Source of the DNA: Octopus sinensis
Lineage: Eukaryota
DNA length: 64,000 nucleotides
Reading direction: 5' to 3'
NCBI RefSeq assembly: GCF_006345805.1
Contig: NC_043024.1
Span: 7,316,001 to 7,380,000, forward strand
This document shows, piece by piece, positions 27,898-37,732 of this stretch. Made by a program: the position numbers and the translations under genes. A model generated the notes under the pieces. That model had not been told where the DNA came from and ran no database searches. It worked only from the letters and a program-made list of their open reading frames with translations. The first letter of the stretch is position 1; every line of letters begins with the position of its first letter.

Positions 27898-28168
27898 TTA
27901 AGGTGGTCCCAATAATCAAGATCTGTCCTGCCCTTTATTTTTTTTAGTACAAGACTTGGAAAAATAAAATTTGCTTGATTAAACCAGTCTAGGCAGTGCC
28001 CCAGAATGGCCATAATCCAATGGCCAAAACAAGTAAAAGATACAAGAGAAAAACATTTAAAAAAAAAAATTTGCACCTATAGCACAGTTGTCTCACCTGT
28101 CCAAGACTTTCAAGTGCATGCATGAATATTTAGATGTAGGCATATAATAAGACATGTTTTGATTTTTA

Positions 28169-28377
28169 CTAGCTTTTTATGAAATGGGGCCACTCTTTTA
28201 TGATATTATACAAATCGGATCCTGGGCATTCTGTGTCTCCCAAATTGCGATGCCCTACAAGGATATAATTGTCACTGATTTGTCCCTTGTTGAGCGAACA
28301 TTTTATCATTTCCTTCAACGATTCTATTGCCTCTGTAGTGGGTTCTTCATTCATAAAATTGCCCAGCAAACAAATTC
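28169..28377 (-). CDS. PGRP: PGRP-A last coding exon (amidase domain C-terminus)
   Basis: ctag|GA ATT..., encodes (G)ICLLGNF...GHRNLGDTECPGSDLYNIIKEWPHFIKS*; contains the Zn-ligand His (GHR) and Cys (CPG). Confidence 0.95.
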
Positions 28378-29329
28378 CTAGAAAAGTGAAACAAACAGAA
28401 ATCTTTGTAGAATTTTGAATACATACTTAATTGCATATATATATATAAAAAAAATAATAATAATGAAATTATTGTATACAGTGCTCAGGTGCACCACAAC
28501 TTGTCAGAAAGTGCATATAGAGTATATGCAGTAATGTACAAATGTCTGGAAAGCGAACAATGTATATATATATACATAATTTTAAAAAGTGTACATTTAA
28601 ACACAAAAGAAAACTACCCTTTAAAAAGTAATTTTTACATGCTAGAAATAGCAGCCAACACGGCCAGAACCACAATTTAATAGCAATTTTCGAAGGGATT
28701 GAAAAATAAAAACTTTTACCTTGTTATTTATTATCGGTTATACCATGGTTTCGAAATTTCTTTAGCAAACAATATTATTTGCCATCCTTTAATAGGTAAT
28801 TTTGCAAAACAATATTATTGCAAGGCGAAGTTCTCATCAGTAACCAGCCTCAATAACTAACTTATAATTCAGAGACAAGAACACGTGTTCCGTGTATATA
28901 TATATATATATATATATACAGAGAGAGAGAGAGAGATTAAAAGCTGAACTGAAAAGGCAAACGGTTTAGCAGGACTTGACAAGGATATTAAATTTAGCTA
29001 GATAATAAAAAGGTATTCATTGCCTCTAATGGCTGTTTCTAGAATATCCCAGCTTAGAGAGGCATTCACGACATCACCAGTTCAAGTACAGCTTAAAGTG
29101 GAATTTTAGTGACATAACAATTTGAGCACTCAGAGGGCATGCCTCTTCATTTCTTGAGTAAGCTGAGGGTCTGCCTTTATTATTTTCTGAAACAAAGATT
29201 ATACAGAGTTAGCAAAAAATGCAGCAATGACCCAGAAAAGGTATGTCCTCAAATATCTTACGCACCCTGTATGTATGTGTGTGTGTGTGTGTGTGTATAA
29301 AATATAAGGGAGTACAGAAAATCTCCTGG

Positions 29330-29525
29330 CTTTAAGGGTATCATGAAAGGCCTGGATGGCAACCCAACCTTCTGAGTTCTTTTGCAAGGCTTAGAAAAAC
29401 TGAAGGACTGCTGCAATAAGTGTGTGAACCTGAAAGGGGAATATGTTGAATAAAATCATAATTAACAGATCCTCCTGTATTGTCTTTTACCTGAAGCCAG
29501 GAACTTTTTAGCACACCCTTGTACA
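29330..29525 (+). mobile_element. Mariner 3' end fragment, shared position with PGRP-B last intron (about 48380-48655)
   Basis: Ends ...GAATATGTTGAATAA...CCAGGAACTTTTTAGCACACCCTTGTA; both copies are followed by GATTGTCA..ATATATAT. Confidence 0.6.
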
Positions 29526-29559
29526 CAGATTGTCACATATATATGGTTCTCTGGCACAT

Positions 29560-30335
29560 AAAAGAACCATCCAAATGTGGCCATTGCCAGCGTCGGCCCG
29601 ACTGGCCTCCATGCTGGTGGCATGTAAAAAGCACCATCCAATTGTGGCCGTTGCCAGCCTCATCTGGCCTCCGTGCTGGTGGCACGTAAAAAGCACCATC
29701 TGATCGTGGCCATTTGCCATCCTCGTCTGGCACGTAAAAAGCACCATCTGATCGTGGCCATTTGCCATCCTCGTCTGGCACGTAAAAAGCACCATCTGAT
29801 CGTGGCCATTTGCCATCCTCGTCTGGCACCTGTGCTGGTGGCACGTAAAAAGCACCATCCGATCGTGGCCATTTGCCATCCTCGTCTGGCACCTGTGCCG
29901 GTGGCACGTAAAAAGCACCATCTGATCGTGGCCATTTGCCATCCTCGTCTGGCACCTGTGCCGGTGGCACGTAAAAAGCACCATCCGATCGTGGCCGTTT
30001 GCCAGCCTCATCTGGCACCTGTGCCGGTGGCACGTAAAAAGCACCATCCGATCGTGGCCGTTTGCCAGCCTCATCTGGCCTCCGTGCTGGTGGCACGTAA
30101 AAAGCACCATCCGATCGTGGTCGTTTGCCAGCCTCATCTGGCACCTGTGCCAGTAGCACGTAAAAAGCCCCCACTACACTCATGAAGTGGTTGGCGTTAG
30201 GAAGGGCATCCAGCTGTAGAAACATTGCCAGATCAGACTGGGCCTGGTGCAGCCTTCTGGCTTCCCAGACCCCAGTTGAACCATCCAACCCATGCTAGCA
30301 AGGAAAGCGGACGCTAAACGATGATGATGATGATG
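29560..30335 (+). repeat. RTE 3' UTR fragment expanded into a 39/63-bp minisatellite with (GAT)n tail
   Basis: Unit GTGGCACGTAAAAAGCACCATCCGATCGTGGCC...CTGGCACCTGTGCCG; same sequence as the 3' end of the LINE at 53507-56107. Confidence 0.85.
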
Positions 30336-30391
30336 ACACACACATACACACATCCATTACAAGCACACTGACAAGCATAAAAGAGACTTAC

Positions 30392-30505
30392 CAATTGATT
30401 TAGAATTATAGTGTTTAGTATGAGCACCCTCAACTGACCAACCACGGCCTTCGTAGACGACACCATTTCCACCAATCAGGAAGTTGTAACCAATATTCAC
30501 AAAGT
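30392..30505 (-). CDS. PGRP: PGRP-A middle domain exon
   Basis: 114 nt, phase 1/1, gaag|...G|gtaag; encodes (D)[37 protein letters not shown](G). Confidence 0.95.
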
Positions 30506-30712
30506 CTTCATACACCAATAGTACATGCAATGGTGACAGTATAGGTGAGAGAAAAACAACAAAAAGGAAATAGATAAATGAAAAAAAAGAATGGAATATA
30601 AAGAAAAAAATTCAAAAGTTCTCATGTGCGTGGCACCATGGGCAAGTGTCTTCTACTATAGCCTTGGGCTGACCAAATCCATGTGAGTGGATTTGGTAGA
30701 CAGCCCGTTGTA

Positions 30713-30771
<59 letters not shown>

Positions 30772-31319
30772 ATGTGTGTGTATATGTTTGTGTGTCTGTG
30801 TTTGACAACCGATGCTGGTGTGTTTATGTCCCCGTAACTTAGCACTTTGGCAAAAGCGACCAATAGAATAAGTACTAGGCTTCCAAAGAATAAGTCCTGG
30901 TGCTGATTTGCTTGACTAAAAGGCAGTGCTCCAGCATAGCCGCAGTCAAATGACTGAATCAAGTAAAAGAGACCCGAGTAATGACATACATACATACATG
31001 CATGCATGCAAGCGAGCTAACAGACAAAAACAAACAAACAAACAATAGGCTTCTTTCAGTTTCCTTCGGCTGAATCTACTTGGTCCAGTCTATAGTAGAG
31101 GACAGTTGCACAGGTCCCATGTTTTCAAAACTGCATGGTTAAAAAGCAAGTTTCCAAGCGCCCCCCACCCCCCGGCGTTGTGCTCATGTGTATGTACGTG
31201 TATGTACATATGAGTGAGTTTCGTTTGTCCTCCCCCCACCACTTCACAACTGGGTGGTTAGTTTATCTACGTCCGCATAACTTAGCTGTTCGGCAAAAGA
31301 CACCGTTAAAATAAGTACT

Positions 31320-32100
31320 TATTTCTTTACTACCCACAACGGGCCACACACAGAGGGGACAAACAAGGACAGACAAAGGGATTAAGTCGATTATATCGAC
31401 CCCAGTGCGTAACAGGTACTTATTTAATCGACCCCGAAAGGATGAAAGGCAAAGTCGACCTCAGTGGAATTTGAACTCAGAACGTAGCAGCAGACGAAAG
31501 ACCTATTTCTTTACTACCCACAAGGGGCTAAACACAGAGGAGACAAACAAGGACAGACAAAGGGATTAAGTCGATTATATCGACCCAGTGCGTAACTGGT
31601 ACTTAATTTATCGACCCCGAAAAGATGAAAGGCAAAGTCGACCTCGGCGGAATTTGAACTCACAACGTAACGGTAGACGAAATACCTATTTCTTTACTAC
31701 CCACAAGGGGCTACACACAGAGGAGACAAACAAGGACAGACAAAGGGATTAAGTCGATTATATCGACCCAGTGCGTAACTGGTACTTAATTTATCGACCC
31801 CGAAAAGATGAAAGGCAAAGTCGACCTCGGCGGAATTTGAACTCACAACGTAACGGTAGACGAAATACCTATTTCTTTACTACCCACAAGGGGCTACACA
31901 CAGAGGAGACAAACAAGGACAGACAAAGAGATTAAGTCGATTATATCGACCCAGTGCGAAACTGGTACTTAATTTATCGACCCCGAAAGGATGAAAGGCA
32001 AAGTCGACTTCATCGGAATTTGAACTCAGAACGTAACGGCTGGCGAAATACGGCTACGCATTTCGCCCGGCGTGCTAACGTTTCTGCCAGCTCGCCGCCT
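31320..32100 (-). mobile_element. SINE2 tetramer with 17-bp TSD
   Basis: Four units of about 182 bp; TSD CCGTTA(A/G)AATAAGTACT at 31303-31319 and 32102-32118. Confidence 0.85.
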
Positions 32101-32699
32101 TCCGTTAGAATAAGTACTACGCTTAAAATAACAGTCTATGGACATCGGGTAAAGGGAGAGAACTCTATCTTTTAATTATATCCTTTTCATTTCAATTCTT
32201 CTCTTTCCCTCTCAGTCTCAGTCACTGAGTGTGTATGCGTCCGTGAGAATGCCAGTATGTGTTTGTGTGTGTGAGTGCGTGTGCGCGTGTGTATGTTTGT
32301 GTGAGAGAACGTGTGTATATGCGTGTATGTGTTTGCGTGTTTTTGTGTGTATAAGAAAGTGTATGTATGAAAGAGTTCATGCGGGTGTATACGTTTATAA
32401 GTCTGTGCGCGTGTGTATATATGTGTGAGTGAAGGTGTGCAGGTGCGTGCGCATGTGAGTGCGTGCGTGCGCGCATATGTGTGTGTGTGTGTGTCAAAGA
32501 TAGAGTGTACGTATATGTGCATGAGAGTGCATATGTGTCTGTGTGTGTGTGTGTGTGTATGTATAATGGTATGTATGTGTTTCTTTAGTACTAAATGGTC
32601 TATCTCTAAAAATAAGCCATCACAAAAACAACCAGGTCTAATTGCACTCAACCCATTTCTCTCTCTCTCTCTCTCTATCTCCTGCTCTCTTTCTGTATA

Positions 32700-34349: not shown

Positions 34350-34663
34350 CTAATGTCATGTAAAAAGCACCCAGTGCATTCTGTAAAGTGGTTGGCATTA
34401 GGAAGGGCATCCAACCATAGCAACCCTGTCAAAACAGACAACTGGAGCCTGGTGCAGCTCTCCGAGCTCACCAGCTCCTGTCAAACCATCCAACCCATGC
34501 TAGCATGGAAAATGGATGTTAAATGATGATGATCATGATGACGATGATGATGATAATGATGATGATGATGATGATGACGATGACGACGACGACGATGATG
34601 GTGATGATGGTGATGATGGTGATGATGATGATGAGGAGGAGGAGGAGGAGGAGGAGGATGAAT

Positions 34664-34700
<37 letters not shown>

Positions 34701-34803
34701 GGATGATGATGAGGATGATGATGATGATGATGATTATGATGATGATGATGATGAGGATGATGAGGATGATGAAGATGATGATGATGGTGATGATGATGAT
34801 GAT
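34350..34803 (+). mobile_element. RTE 3' fragment with expanded (GAT)n tail abutting PGRP-A splice donor
   Basis: ...CCATGCTAGCATGGAAAATGGATGTTAAAT followed by about 280 bp (GAT/GAC/GAG)n. Confidence 0.85.
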
Positions 34804-34811
34804 TTACTTAC

Positions 34812-34987
34812 CTCTTTTATCCATGTGATTGCTCTGGATACTCCGCACTAACTTGTCACAATCCTCAGTTGTGGTGCAGCTCCCAGTAGCTGAATGATGG
34901 ACAACGAAATACTCGACAGGGACCTTCAGTTGTGTCACTGATTTTGGTTTTCTGGCACCCCACTCAGTCCGATTCCGTATAATTGGG
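34812..34987 (-). CDS. PGRP: PGRP-A first domain exon (5' boundary uncertain)
   Basis: Encodes PIIRNRTEWGARKPKSVTQLKVPVEYFVVHHSATGSCTTTEDCDKLVRSIQSNHMDKR; G|gtaag donor; first AG acceptor tttcaag (phase 2). The ORF stays open upstream to an ATG at 35055. Confidence 0.9.
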
Positions 34988-35325
34988 CTTGAAACAATAA
35001 GAATGCAAATAAATAAATAAATAAAAATACAAATAAAAACAAAAAAGATAGGCATGGCTGTGTGGTAAGAAGCTTGCTTTCCAATTGCATGGTTCTGGGT
35101 TCAGTTCCACTGTGTGGCACCTTGGGCAAGTGCCATCTACTTTAGCTTTGGGCCAATCAGAGCCTTGTGAGTGGATTTTATAGATGGAAACTGAAAGAAA
35201 CCTGTGTGTGTGTGTGTGTGTGTTTGTCTCCATTATCAATTGACAACCAGTGCTGGTAAGTTTCCATGCACATAACTTAGTGGTTCAGCAAAAGGAGATG
35301 ATAGAATAAGTACCAGGCTAAAATA

Positions 35326-35665: not shown

Positions 35666-36323
35666 ATATATATATATATATATATATATGTATAAGGATG
35701 AAAAGGAACACACAAGTTGATATATATGAAAAAACAAGTCAGGATAGAAAATGCTAAAATAATTTTATAAAGAACATTTCAGTACCAGTTTCAGTCATTT
35801 GAGACCTTTTCAACTGTAACAATTAAATAATTAAATTTAGAAAAATTAAAAGAAAAGATTTTTCAAAAGAATATTTGTATAGTGTTCAAATATAAGTGGC
35901 ATTTTCCTTGTTTCTGCCTGTTTCTGTCTCTCTAGAATTCACAACGACCTCGAACCCACAAGAGTCATTGGCTGGGTCTGAAATCTGACCAATGGTAACC
36001 TATATTCCAACAAAGTTTGCAGGTGCCGAAGGATTTTAGGCATCTCCAAAGGGCCCCAGGCATTGTCCAAGTATTGCAACTACATAGCAAGACAGGCAAG
36101 ACGAGAGACCTGAAGACCTGAGAATTTGTCCTGCTCAGAATAGTTCAAGCTAAATTGCATTCTGCTTCCTTCTGGTGACCATCCTGTCTTTTTTTTTCTT
36201 TTTATAATGAATCTCTTTACCTTTTTTTAGTTTTTTTTTTTTAACTGTTCATGTGACAATGTAGAATTCTTCTTCAGTGAAAATTTTGAAGAAAATGGTA
36301 ACATTTGATTTGGAATCACTTAC

Positions 36324-36378
36324 GTTTCGGAGGACATTTCATGGATTTGAGATCAACTCTTGGAATTATGAGCCTTCC
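36324..36378 (-). CDS. Candidate upstream 55-nt exon of PGRP-A (GRLIIPRVDLKSMKCPPK)
   Basis: ttttcag|...C|gtaagtg, open in phase 0 to 1; conserved in the PGRP-B copy. Confidence 0.55.
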
Positions 36379-36453
36379 CTGAAAATTTCAAAAGGATATT
36401 TCAAAGACAACAACAACAACAACAACACTTATAATCCTCCTCCTCCTCTTCCT

Positions 36454-36484
<31 letters not shown>

Positions 36485-37732
36485 ATCATCATCGTTTAAT
36501 GATGTCCGCTTTCCATGCTAGCATGGGTTGGACGGTTTTGACTGAGGGCTGGTGAACCAGATGGCTGCACCAGGCTCCAATCTTGCTCTGGCAGTGTTTC
36601 TACGGCTGGATGCCCTTCCTAATGCCAACCACTCCGAGAGCACAGTGGGTGCTTTTTACGTGCCACTGGCACAGGGGCCAGTCAGGCGGTACTGGCAATG
36701 ACCTCGCTCAACAACTGATTTCTTTTATTGGCCACAAGGGTACAAGACATGGAGAACAATATCAAAGGACGACTTACAACACACAAAAACAAAACAAAAT
36801 TAAAATTACATCGATCAAACTGAGATGACTACCACATTAACGGTAATAATAGGATATTTACCATAAATCCTCGGTAAATCCTTGGGCAAGTGTCTTCTAC
36901 TATAGCCTCGGGTCGACCAAAGCCTTGCAAGTTGATTTGGTAGACGGAAACTGAAAGAAGCCCGTCGTATATATGTATATATATATATATGCGTGTGTGT
37001 GTTTGTGTGTGTGTTTGTGTGTCTGTGTTTGTGTGTGTGTTTGTGTGTCTCTGTTTGTCCCCCTAGCATTGCCTGACAACTGATGCTGGTGTGTTTACAT
37101 CCCCGTTACTTAGCAGTTCGGCAAAAGAGACTGATAGAATAAGTACTGGGCTTACAAAAGAATAAGTCCTGGGGTCGAGTTGCTTGATCAAAGGCGGTGC
37201 TCCAGCATGGCCACAGTCAAATGACTGAAACCAGTAAAACAGAGAGATTTGTATTTGATTTTGGCTATACTCTTTTACTAGTTTCAATCATTTGACTGTG
37301 GCCATGCTGGAGCACCGCCTTTAATCGAGCAAATCAACCCCAGGACTTATTCTTTGTAAGCCTAGTACTTATTCTATAGGTCTCTTTTGCTGAACCGCTA
37401 AGTTACAGGGACGTAAACACACCGGCATCAGTTGTCAAGCGATGTCGGGGAGACAAACACAGACACACAAACATATACACACACACACACATATAGGTAT
37501 ATACGACGGGCTTCTTTCAGTTTCTATCTACCAAATCCACTCACAAGGCTTTGGTCAGCCTGAGGCTATAGTAGAAGACACTTGCCCAAGGTGCCACGCA
37601 ATGGGAATGAACTTGGAACCATGTGGTTGGTAAGCAAGCTACTTACCACACAGTCACTCCTGCACCTATGAAACGTAAAGACAGATGAAATACCGTTAAG
37701 CATTTCGGCCAGCATGCTAACGTTTCTGCCAG

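What the first reader, a model, noticed from the sequence alone, without database searches (positions are those of the whole stretch)
34812..35060. PGRP-A: 36-nt deletion breaks the ancestral frame, while a SINE-edge ATG supplies an in-frame hydrophobic leader
Seen: relative to B, A lacks 36 nt at the exon start, including B's acceptor and the N-terminal Cys. The first AG becomes phase 2, so splicing from the phase-1 55-nt exon gives a frameshift (..QLYGIGLSGVPENQNQ*). The three domain exons nevertheless remain stop-free. A true ATG at 35055, at the edge of a SINE1 head, opens an uninterrupted frame MPIFFVFICIFIYLFICILIVSS-PIIRNRTEW, derived from the old polypyrimidine tract. B has an in-frame TGA at the equivalent place. 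Inference: possible de novo signal peptide from intron/SINE sequence making A secreted. T-rich DNA encodes hydrophobic residues by chance, so this may be coincidental. A phase-1 cryptic acceptor (aaatcag|TG) could also rescue the frame.
Basis: partly seen in the sequence, partly recalled or inferred. Interest (0 to 1): 0.75.

Follow-up and report, generated by a model that had tools for sequence, protein, structure and literature searches.

The report
Octopus PGRP paralog with rewired start
An octopus immune gene copy really did lose its old splice site through a 36-base deletion, but the greasy "leader" upstream is most likely just intron. The copy can be read in frame by ordinary splicing from a start codon hidden in the previous exon, so this is a modest gene-structure curiosity rather than a newborn secretion signal.

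Summary
The window is Octopus sinensis chromosome CM016886.1, with the gene on the minus strand. PGRP paralog A lacks 36 nt that B has, including B's phase-1 acceptor. The next AG (34989-34988) is phase 2, so the ancestral frame breaks. The ATG at 35055 opens MPIFF...VSS in frame with the domain.

The deletion and the ATG are also in the O. vulgaris and O. bimaculoides orthologs, so both are real and old.

The functional reading is not supported:
- An open frame across such a T-rich tract is expected 44% of the time.
- Its five interspecies changes are all non-synonymous.
- It has no charged N-region and a 26-residue uncharged run, so it resembles a membrane anchor more than a signal peptide.
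- All three public annotations treat it as intron.

Two annotations use this start, giving a leaderless 170-aa amidase-type PGRP. The acceptor is also in frame with two GT donors in B's last exon; RefSeq fuses B and A.

Whether A is still functional is unresolved (dN/dS 0.36-0.49, not significant). No RNA data were available here.

The parts
36324..36378 (-). A's 55-nt exon (ttttcag|GGAAGG...CGAAAC|gtaagt). In the ancestral frame it reads GRLIIPRVDLKSMKCPPK and ends in phase 1.
   Evidence: Frame shown by O. vulgaris proteins P0002/P0003.
36335..36337 (-). ATG in a different frame of the 55-nt exon (ATG TCC TCC GAA AC = MSSET). An in-frame TGA lies upstream in the same exon. This ATG is the annotated CDS start of the A ortholog in O. 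bimaculoides and O. vulgaris.
36340..36342 (-). ATG of the ancestral frame (the M of SMKCPPK), 5 nt upstream of the MSSET ATG and out of frame with it. It is lost in A of O. vulgaris (ACA) and O. bimaculoides (AAG). It is present in O. sinensis A inside a B-to-A gene-conversion tract.
34988..35055 (-). The 'leader': the last 68 nt of the intron, made of the polypyrimidine tract and the AG acceptor (34989-34988). It is open in the domain frame from ATG 35055-35053.
   Evidence: Treated as intron in RefSeq XP_036370400.1.
35055..35294 (+). tRNA-like SINE copy, antisense to the gene, with its head at 35055. It sits at the same place in B, C and all orthologs, so the insertion predates the duplications.
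34989..34990 (-). Junction of the 36-nt deletion (B 59351-59316 is absent). It is flanked in B by TTTCATG / CTTTATG microhomology.
34812..34987 (-). A's first PGRP-domain exon (176 nt), starting C CCA ATT ATA CGG. It needs 2 nt from the upstream exon.
30392..30505 (-). A's second PGRP-domain exon (114 nt)
28169..28377 (-). A's third PGRP-domain exon with stop TAG 28171-28169
59316..59351 (-). The 36 nt of B that A lacks: in-frame TGA (59351-59349), tandem acceptors (catgAG, gagaAG|59344) and the first 29 exon nt
47309..47339 (-). End of B's last exon. It holds two GT donors (exon ends 47339 and 47312) that are in phase with A's acceptor, and the non-canonical RefSeq junction (exon end 47309).
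62324..62378 (-). B's 55-nt exon. It lies inside a 434-bp tract that is 97.7% identical to A's (35994-36427).

Best explanation
The interval 34812-35060 is the first PGRP-domain exon of tandem paralog A (34987-34812) plus the last 68 nt of the preceding intron. That intron end is a polypyrimidine tract abutting an antisense SINE.

Before O. sinensis/O. vulgaris and O. bimaculoides split, a 36-nt deletion between short direct repeats removed the ancestral phase-1 acceptor. The surviving AG needs 2 nt from the upstream exon. That phase happens to match an ATG already present in another frame of the 55-nt exon; it is a by-product of the conserved Lys-Cys codons AAA TGT.

The most likely product is therefore MSSET|PIIRNRTEW..., a 170-aa leaderless, hence cytosolic, amidase-type PGRP. 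It contains the complete fold but has lost the signal peptide, the Cys-rich N-terminal module and the N-terminal Cys.

The hydrophobic ORF from ATG 35055 is a chance by-product of T-rich intron sequence.

Shown: the anatomy, the phases, the age of the deletion, and the three annotations.
Inferred: that the MSSET ATG is really used and that A is still functional. The confidence given is for the whole statement; that 34988-35055 is ordinarily intronic I hold at about 0.9.
For: Route to an intact ORF:
- The MSSET ATG plus the first AG gives an uninterrupted 513-nt CDS.
- This start is the annotated CDS start of the A ortholog in O. bimaculoides (XP_052833059.1, MSSETIRNRTEW) and in O. vulgaris (CDS start L002:38309).
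- RefSeq on this very genome starts A's exon at 34987.

Age and loss of the old N-terminus:
- The deletion and the ATG at 35055 are shared by three species and absent from all four non-A paralogs.
- No exon-1 or promoter relic lies between B and A in O. vulgaris (16.6 kb without gaps) or in the window.

Hints that the MSSET frame is maintained:
- The acceptor moved by exactly 6 nt in the O. sinensis/O. vulgaris lineage (CATG to CAAG gained an AG; AAGC to AATT lost one), which preserves the MSSET phase.
- The out-of-frame upstream ATG is lost in A of both O. vulgaris and O. bimaculoides, by different substitutions.

The protein looks complete:
- Residues 4-168 align end to end with solved PGRP domains.
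- Pfam Amidase_2 scores 86.5 bits against a cutoff of 26.
- H35, Y70, H144, T150 and C152 are retained.

Other:
- dN/dS since the deletion is 0.36 (Nei-Gojobori counting method) to 0.49 (maximum-likelihood codon model).
- An A-type second domain exon sequence, spliced to a first domain exon, was in the O. vulgaris hemocyte transcript used for qPCR (PMC4199593).
- Cephalopods are known to have an intracellular PGRP, the nuclear EsPGRP1 (PMC3349304).
Against: - No RNA evidence was accessible here.
- The likelihood-ratio test against dN/dS = 1 is not significant (p = 0.11).
- Exon divergence (9.5%) equals flanking non-coding divergence (9.8%). Intactness of the first and second domain exons is only mildly improbable under neutrality: P(no stop) 0.39 times P(no indel) about 0.25.
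- The three annotations disagree on the upstream partner.
- The O. vulgaris model for B ends in A's 55-nt exon. This suggests the exon is reached by read-through from B, where the MSSET ATG would lie 29 nt after a long ORF's stop.
- In O. sinensis a gene-conversion tract has put an out-of-frame ATG back 5 nt upstream.
- O. bimaculoides still shows an open signal-peptide exon upstream of its A ortholog, though that assembly is gappy.
Confidence: 0.5

Rival explanations
1. A is a decaying relic with no protein product. It lost its acceptor and, in O. sinensis and O. vulgaris, its signal-peptide exon. It is transcribed only as the tail of read-through RNAs from B, and its exons have not yet picked up a stop.
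For: - Exon divergence between O. bimaculoides and O. sinensis (9.5%) equals the flanking non-coding rate (9.8%).
- dN/dS is not significantly below 1.
- The family as a whole has dN/dS of 0.5-1.0 between paralogs.
- The O. vulgaris B model terminates inside A's 55-nt exon.
- There is no exon 1 or promoter relic upstream of A.
- The three pipelines give three incompatible models.
Against: - All three domain exons are intact here, and the first two domain exons are intact in three species, after a divergence of dS about 0.2. The joint neutral probability is about 0.1 for those two exons alone.
- All catalytic and zinc-binding residues are kept.
- dN (0.07) is lower than dS (0.20).
- The acceptor shift is frame-preserving and the upstream out-of-frame ATG was lost in two lineages.
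Confidence: 0.25
2. A is the second domain of a conjoined B-A protein. Read-through transcription from B, with splicing from a donor in B's last exon directly to A's acceptor (skipping the 55-nt exon), gives a secreted tandem two-domain PGRP. RefSeq annotates it this way for this genome.
For: - XP_036370400.1 (481 aa, 'peptidoglycan recognition protein 3') equals B plus A of the window exactly, joined ...HFIKKIM-Y-PIIRNRTEW.
- Two canonical GT donors (exon ends 47339 and 47312) are in phase with acceptor 34987.
- The same AT|GTAAAA donor is present in O. vulgaris B.
- Multi-domain PGRP predictions are common in the protein library.
- A has no promoter or exon 1 of its own in this lineage.
Against: - The only junction that reproduces the RefSeq protein has a non-canonical intron start (AAAATT). 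This looks like a forced join of tandem paralogs.
- Both canonical donors are weak.
- The O. vulgaris annotation joins B to the 55-nt exon instead, which stops the frame (...EGS*).
- A's 55-nt exon keeps perfect splice sites in three species.
- O. bimaculoides RefSeq models A on its own.
Confidence: 0.15
3. An alternative start site in the intron or SINE, or intron retention, lets ATG 35055 initiate translation. That would add a de novo hydrophobic N-terminus, acting as a signal peptide or membrane anchor, to the intact PGRP domain.
For: - The ORF is real and continuous with the domain.
- It is open in all three A orthologs and closed in every non-A paralog.
- The ATG arose on the A branch from ACG, a CpG transition.
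- The ATG context GCCATGC has a purine at -3.
- O. bimaculoides would keep the ancestral Cys just after the leader.
Against: - Chance expectation is 0.44 for the open frame and about 0.08 with an ATG.
- There are 4 replacements and 0 synonymous changes between species, and 92% of random changes would keep the frame open.
- It has no n-region charge, a 26-residue uncharged run, 5 K/R right after, and Pro at +1 of the VSS|P site. It is therefore not signal-peptide-like, and by the positive-inside rule the domain would face the cytosol.
- An out-of-frame ATG lies 36 nt upstream (35091).
- No close relative among 1.84 billion representative proteins aligns to residues 1-21.
- The exact 83-aa ORF is not on record.
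- All three annotations treat it as intron.
Confidence: 0.05
4. The ancestral frame is rescued through the cryptic phase-1 acceptor aaatcag|TG (exon start 34937). This gives ...KCPPK-LTQLKVPVEYF...
For: The junction is in frame and reads through to the normal stop.
Against: - It would remove PIIRNRTEWGARKPKSV, the conserved RxxWGA start of the fold that every solved PGRP domain contains.
- It lies 50 nt beyond the first AG.
- A has no signal-peptide exon in O. sinensis or O. vulgaris.
- O. vulgaris A has no ATG in that frame of the 55-nt exon.
- No annotation uses it.
Confidence: 0.03

Closest known systems
Public gene models of this locus: RefSeq XP_036370400.1 (O. sinensis 'PGRP 3'), RefSeq XP_052833059.1 (O. 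bimaculoides 'PGRP 2'), and the submitter annotation of O. vulgaris (CAI9741612.1, CAI9741613.1 and a 910-aa model)
   Same: All use the domain exons described here. All enter A's first domain exon at the first AG (34987) or its O. bimaculoides equivalent. Two of them start at the MSSET ATG.
   Different: They disagree on the upstream partner: B's last exon, the 55-nt exon, or read-through into a downstream TPR gene. None records the 36-nt deletion, the frame switch or the acceptor shift. The RefSeq B-A junction is non-canonical.
Full-length secreted octopus PGRPs (paralogs B and C; about 270 aa) and Euprymna EsPGRP5 (253 aa with a signal peptide, PMC3349304)
   Same: The same three domain exons and splice phases, the same amidase residues, and 68-76% identity.
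   Different: A lacks the acceptor, 12 N-terminal codons including the Cys, and (in O. sinensis and O. vulgaris) the signal-peptide / Cys-rich exon 1.
Intracellular PGRPs: Euprymna EsPGRP1 (nuclear; PMC3349304) and Drosophila PGRP-LE (from my own knowledge)
   Same: A single PGRP domain without a secretion signal. This is what the MSSET model predicts for A.
   Different: Localisation of A is untested. A descends from a secreted paralog through a splice-site deletion, not from an old intracellular lineage.
Tandem two-domain PGRPs (mammalian PGLYRP3/4; from my own knowledge) and conjoined read-through genes
   Same: The RefSeq model has two PGRP domains in one chain. In-phase GT donors exist in B's last exon.
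   Different: The annotated junction is non-canonical and no transcript evidence was available. The two domains are neighbouring genes 12 kb apart.
De novo signal peptides or transmembrane segments from non-coding, T-rich or transposon-derived sequence
   Same: T-rich DNA read in frame gives a hydrophobic stretch, and an ATG arose by a point mutation.
   Different: Only one nucleotide of the ORF is SINE-derived. There is no sign of selection, no signal-peptide architecture and no transcript that contains it.

Membership tests
PGRP / type-2 amidase (Pfam PF01510 Amidase_2) | Domain match above the curated threshold | tested here: met
   86.5 bits against a cutoff of 26, residues 28-154 of the 170-aa model
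PGRP / type-2 amidase (Pfam PF01510 Amidase_2) | Complete fold, alignable end to end with solved PGRP domains | tested here: met
   Residues 4-168 align to 4z8i, 1sk3, 1oht, 1sxr and others, E down to 1.5e-49
PGRP / type-2 amidase (Pfam PF01510 Amidase_2) | Zn-binding His/His/Cys plus catalytic Tyr and Thr (roles known from T7 lysozyme and PGRP-LB; my own knowledge) | tested here: met
   VVHHS (H35), GYNF (Y70) and GHRNLGDTECPG (H144, T150, C152) are aligned to the same motifs in 4z8i. Also kept in the O. vulgaris and O. bimaculoides orthologs for the first two domain exons.
PGRP / type-2 amidase (Pfam PF01510 Amidase_2) | Peptidoglycan binding or amidase activity | not testable with these tools
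   Needs recombinant protein
Cleavable Sec-type signal peptide (the proposed leader) | Positively charged n-region | tested here: not met
   0 K/R before the hydrophobic run; the paralogs' true signal peptide has 1
Cleavable Sec-type signal peptide (the proposed leader) | Hydrophobic core of about 7-15 residues | tested here: not met
   26-residue uncharged run with Kyte-Doolittle hydropathy (19-residue window) of 3.43; B/C signal peptide has a 14-residue run and 1.49
Cleavable Sec-type signal peptide (the proposed leader) | c-region with small residues at -3/-1 and no Pro at +1 | tested here: inconclusive
   V-S-S|P fits -3/-1 but puts Pro at +1. S|SP is possible. No SignalP was available.
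Cleavable Sec-type signal peptide (the proposed leader) | Encoded in a mature mRNA | not testable with these tools
   No RNA data. All three annotations place it in an intron. The exact ORF is not on record.
Transposon exonisation / de novo coding segment | Transposon-derived nucleotides contribute coding sequence | tested here: not met
   SINE copies end at 35055, so only the A of the ATG is SINE-derived. The rest is the old polypyrimidine tract.
Transposon exonisation / de novo coding segment | Purifying selection on the new segment | tested here: not met
   5 nt differences between O. bimaculoides and O. sinensis give 4 replacements and 0 synonymous changes. 92% of random 5-substitution sets keep the frame open.
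Conjoined two-domain PGRP (B-A) | In-frame junction between canonical splice sites | tested here: inconclusive
   The RefSeq junction is non-canonical. Two canonical but weak GT donors are in phase. No junction reads were available.

The most novel reading that the evidence does not exclude
The intronic ATG at 35055, born by a CpG transition on the A branch next to a SINE head, is used from an alternative start site. It would then give the orphaned PGRP domain a de novo N-terminal hydrophobic segment, acting as a membrane anchor or signal, conserved as an open frame in three Octopus species.
Probability: 0.05. Interest if true: 0.7.

Novelty: new member of a known kind. Interest (0 to 1): 0.27.

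Why it matters
If the MSSET route is real, this is a clean, datable example of how one small deletion can turn a secreted immune amidase into a cytosolic one. The deletion switches the splice phase onto a start codon that already lay hidden in another frame of the upstream exon. That adds to the known range of PGRP localisations in cephalopods.

In practice the locus is an annotation problem: three pipelines give three incompatible models. It also shows that hydrophobic ORFs across polypyrimidine tracts should not be read as signal peptides without RNA evidence.

Tried and rejected
- Homolog search with the first domain exon alone returned only one protein, so the word index is not exhaustive.
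- Exact look-up of the 83-aa leader ORF found nothing on record.
- At first I took the MSSET frame to be the ancestral one.
- Selection tests were indecisive. Nei-Gojobori dN/dS is 0.36. The maximum-likelihood estimate is 0.46-0.49, with a likelihood-ratio test p of 0.11. The neutral simulation gives P of about 0.1 for intact first and second domain exons.
- The third domain exon of the orthologs could not be compared. In O. bimaculoides it lies in an assembly gap, and in O. vulgaris beyond the fetched locus, where the structure also differs.
- The exhaustive representative search found no close relative covering the leader. Only distant PGRPs whose own signal peptides align loosely did so.
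- The 910-aa O. vulgaris product could not be retrieved, so its exact first junction is inferred from phase.
- The qPCR primers in PMC4199593 proved to be chimeric. The forward primer matches C's first domain exon and the reverse matches the A-type second domain exon. They are therefore only weak evidence that A is expressed.

Full report
**Source and layout**

The window is 100% identical over 45,832 nt to Octopus sinensis GCA_006345805.1, chromosome CM016886.1. It is 95-98.7% identical to the syntenic O. vulgaris locus (L002) and about 87-90% identical to O. bimaculoides (L001).

Two tandem PGRP paralogs lie on the minus strand.
- A: 55-nt exon 36378-36324; three domain exons (d1-d3): d1 34987-34812, d2 30505-30392, d3 28377-28169.
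- B: 55-nt exon 62378-62324; d1 59344-59138, d2 50259-50146, d3 47522-47308.

O. vulgaris has a third paralog, C, upstream (L003). An assembly gap lies between A and B at 39791-39890.

**Checking the observation**

Aligning A with B shows that A lacks 36 nt (B 59351-59316). The full-length O. vulgaris proteins P0002 and P0003 have three parts: a signal peptide plus Cys-rich exon 1, the 55-nt exon (...GKLIIPRVDLKSMKCPPK) and then Q|DTVLRYNALCPSIRSRAEW....

The missing segment holds B's two tandem AGs and the first 29 exon nt. It is flanked in B by the short direct repeats TTTCATG / CTTTATG, as expected for a slippage or microhomology deletion.

In A the first AG (34989-34988) leaves one nucleotide before a codon boundary. 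The ancestral frame therefore runs ...KCPPKPQLYGIGLSGVPENQNQ*. The three domain exons are open and end at the usual stop.

ATG 35055-35053 opens MPIFFVFICIFIYLFICILIVSS-PIIRNRTEW. Many SINE copies in the window end exactly at 35055, so the ATG straddles the head of an antisense tRNA-like SINE. B has an in-frame TGA.

**Age and polarity**

The A orthologs of O. vulgaris and O. bimaculoides carry the same deletion and the same CAGCCATGCC. B of both species, C of O. vulgaris and a fourth paralog in O. bimaculoides all keep the 36 nt and read CAGTCACGCC. The deletion is therefore real, is derived, and predates the split of these species (synonymous divergence dS about 0.2). The ATG arose on the same branch by an ACG-to-ATG (CpG) transition.

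The Cys codon lies just 3' of the deletion. It is still TGC in O. bimaculoides. In O. sinensis and O. vulgaris it became AGC, and that same T-to-A change created the present AG.

**Is the leader more than chance?**

- The 66 nt after the ATG are 64% T. 44% of shuffles have no in-frame stop. About 8% of comparably T-rich windows in this 64 kb are open with an in-frame ATG upstream; that count includes overlapping windows and the tract itself.
- Between O. bimaculoides and O. sinensis the leader has 5 nt differences. All are non-synonymous (I>V, C>L, L>H, S>C). 92% of random sets of five substitutions would leave it open.
- Its architecture is not that of a cleavable signal peptide. It has no K/R before a 26-residue uncharged run, a Kyte-Doolittle hydropathy (19-residue window) of 3.43 and five K/R in the next 15 residues. 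The true signal peptide of B/C has a 14-residue core and a hydropathy of 1.49. Pro would sit at +1 of VSS|P. By the positive-inside rule (established knowledge) such a segment would more likely leave the PGRP domain in the cytosol.
- An exhaustive HMMER search of 1.84 billion representative proteins found no close relative that covers leader residues 1-21. The exact ORF is not on record.

The phase-2 acceptor is not orphaned.

(i) The 55-nt exon contains a second ATG (36337-36335) in another frame, a by-product of the conserved AAA TGT (Lys-Cys) codons. An in-frame TGA lies upstream of it. Spliced to the first AG it gives MSSET|PIIRNRTEW...FIKS*, a 513-nt CDS. This ATG is the annotated CDS start of the A ortholog in two annotations:
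- O. bimaculoides: XP_052833059.1, MSSETIRNRTEW; L001:10001.
- O. vulgaris submitter annotation: L002:38309.

(ii) Two GT donors in B's last exon (exon ends 47339 and 47312) are also in phase with 34987. RefSeq for this very genome fuses B and A into XP_036370400.1 (481 aa), joined ...HFIKKIM-Y-PIIRNRTEW. The only junction that reproduces that protein has a non-canonical intron start, AAAATT.

(iii) The O. vulgaris model of B ends ...NVIKEEGS*. Its stop lies inside A's 55-nt exon, reached from the internal donor GA|GTGGCC. This implies read-through from B into A.

All three annotations thus treat 34988-35055 as intron.

**Hints that the MSSET route is maintained**

- O. bimaculoides uses cccaag|C ATA CGG. 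In O. sinensis and O. vulgaris that AG is lost (AAGC>AATT) and a new AG lies exactly 6 nt upstream (CATG>CAAG). This adds Pro-Ile in frame.
- The ancestral-frame ATG lies 5 nt upstream of the MSSET ATG, where it would be an out-of-frame upstream start. It is lost in A of O. vulgaris (ACA) and of O. bimaculoides (AAG). In O. sinensis it is back, inside a 434-bp tract that is 97.7% identical between A and B while the flanks are about 80% identical. That pattern indicates B-to-A gene conversion.
- O. vulgaris and O. sinensis have no trace of a signal-peptide exon or its promoter between B and A. The gappy O. bimaculoides assembly still shows one.

**Is A functional?**

The 170-aa model covers the entire PGRP fold: residues 4-168 align to solved structures and Pfam Amidase_2 scores 86.5 bits. 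It keeps H35, Y70, H144, T150 and C152.

For O. bimaculoides versus O. sinensis/O. vulgaris, an interval that is entirely post-deletion, dN/dS is 0.35-0.36 by Nei-Gojobori counting. By maximum likelihood it is 0.46-0.49, with a likelihood-ratio test p of 0.11.

Exon divergence (9.5%) equals flanking non-coding divergence (9.8%). The chance of no stop (0.39) and no indel (about 0.25) in d1 plus d2 under neutrality is about 0.1. This leans towards constraint but does not settle it.

In the O. vulgaris hemocyte study (PMC4199593) the reverse qPCR primer matches the A-type d2 exactly. The 119-bp amplicon equals the spliced d1-d2 distance. However, the forward primer matches C, so this is weak evidence of expression.

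**Verdict**

My weights are:
- Leaderless MSSET protein: 0.5.
- Non-functional relic: 0.25.
- B-A fusion: 0.15.
- Cryptic acceptor at 34937: 0.03. It would delete the conserved RxxWGA start of the fold.

That 34988-35055 is ordinarily intronic I hold at about 0.9. RNA junction counts would decide among these. Nothing in this work called for a referred step.

Noticed in passing
window 35994-36427 vs 61995-62426: A 434-bp tract covering the 55-nt exon and the start of the next intron is 97.7% identical between A and B, while the flanks are about 80% identical. O. vulgaris A keeps A-specific bases there. This looks like recent B-to-A gene conversion in O. sinensis. It restored an out-of-frame ATG at 36342.
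   Followed up: partly
window about 36323-36230 (A) and 62323-62230 (B); L002, L003, L001 equivalents: The first 90-100 nt of the intron after the 55-nt exon are almost invariant across paralogs A, B and C and across three species. That is far more conserved than the exons. It could be a splicing or regulatory element or a conversion hotspot.
   Followed up: no
window 36710-36810 and 62762-62889; L001 9466-9566 and 9805-9899: A roughly 100-nt block lies 330-430 nt upstream of the 55-nt exon and contains GTAAGT and AATAAA motifs. It is 93-95% conserved between O. bimaculoides and O. sinensis, in both A and B, and is tandemly duplicated in O. bimaculoides.
   Followed up: no
window 47309 / 34987 (RefSeq XP_036370400.1): The RefSeq B-A fusion needs an intron that starts AAAATT, which is non-canonical. 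Canonical GT donors 3 and 30 nt upstream would also be in frame. The model may be a forced join of tandem paralogs.
   Followed up: yes
L002 47664-47744 and 45590-47591 (O. vulgaris): O. vulgaris has a second A-type d2 (second domain exon) copy 2.9 kb downstream of A's d2, plus about 2 kb with no counterpart in O. sinensis. Its annotation runs A on into a 910-aa product with TPR hits from a downstream gene.
   Followed up: partly
window 34523-34803 and about 58936-59130: A long (ATG/CAT)n trinucleotide microsatellite, about 94 units in A, starts 8 nt after the d1 donor in both A and B.
   Followed up: no
window 29602-30168 and 31316-32051: There are tandem repeats in A's introns: units of 48-63 nt (about 6 copies) and 183 nt (4 copies, 94% matches).
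   Followed up: no
window 39791-39890: A 100-N assembly gap lies between A and B. The matching O. vulgaris interval (L002 about 27958-32354) is about 4.4 kb, against about 1.4 kb here.
   Followed up: partly
window 53521-54697 (+) and 56895-57548 (-); 44939-45286 (+): Reverse-transcriptase-like ORFs (YTDD motif) of a retroelement lie inside B's d1-d2 intron. A mariner-like transposase N-terminal fragment lies between A and B.
   Followed up: no
PMC4199593 Table 2 vs L003:17239, L002:44738: The published O. vulgaris PGRP qPCR primer pair is chimeric between paralogs. The forward primer matches C's d1 exactly and the reverse matches the A-type d2 exactly. The reported PGRP expression may therefore mix paralogs.
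   Followed up: yes
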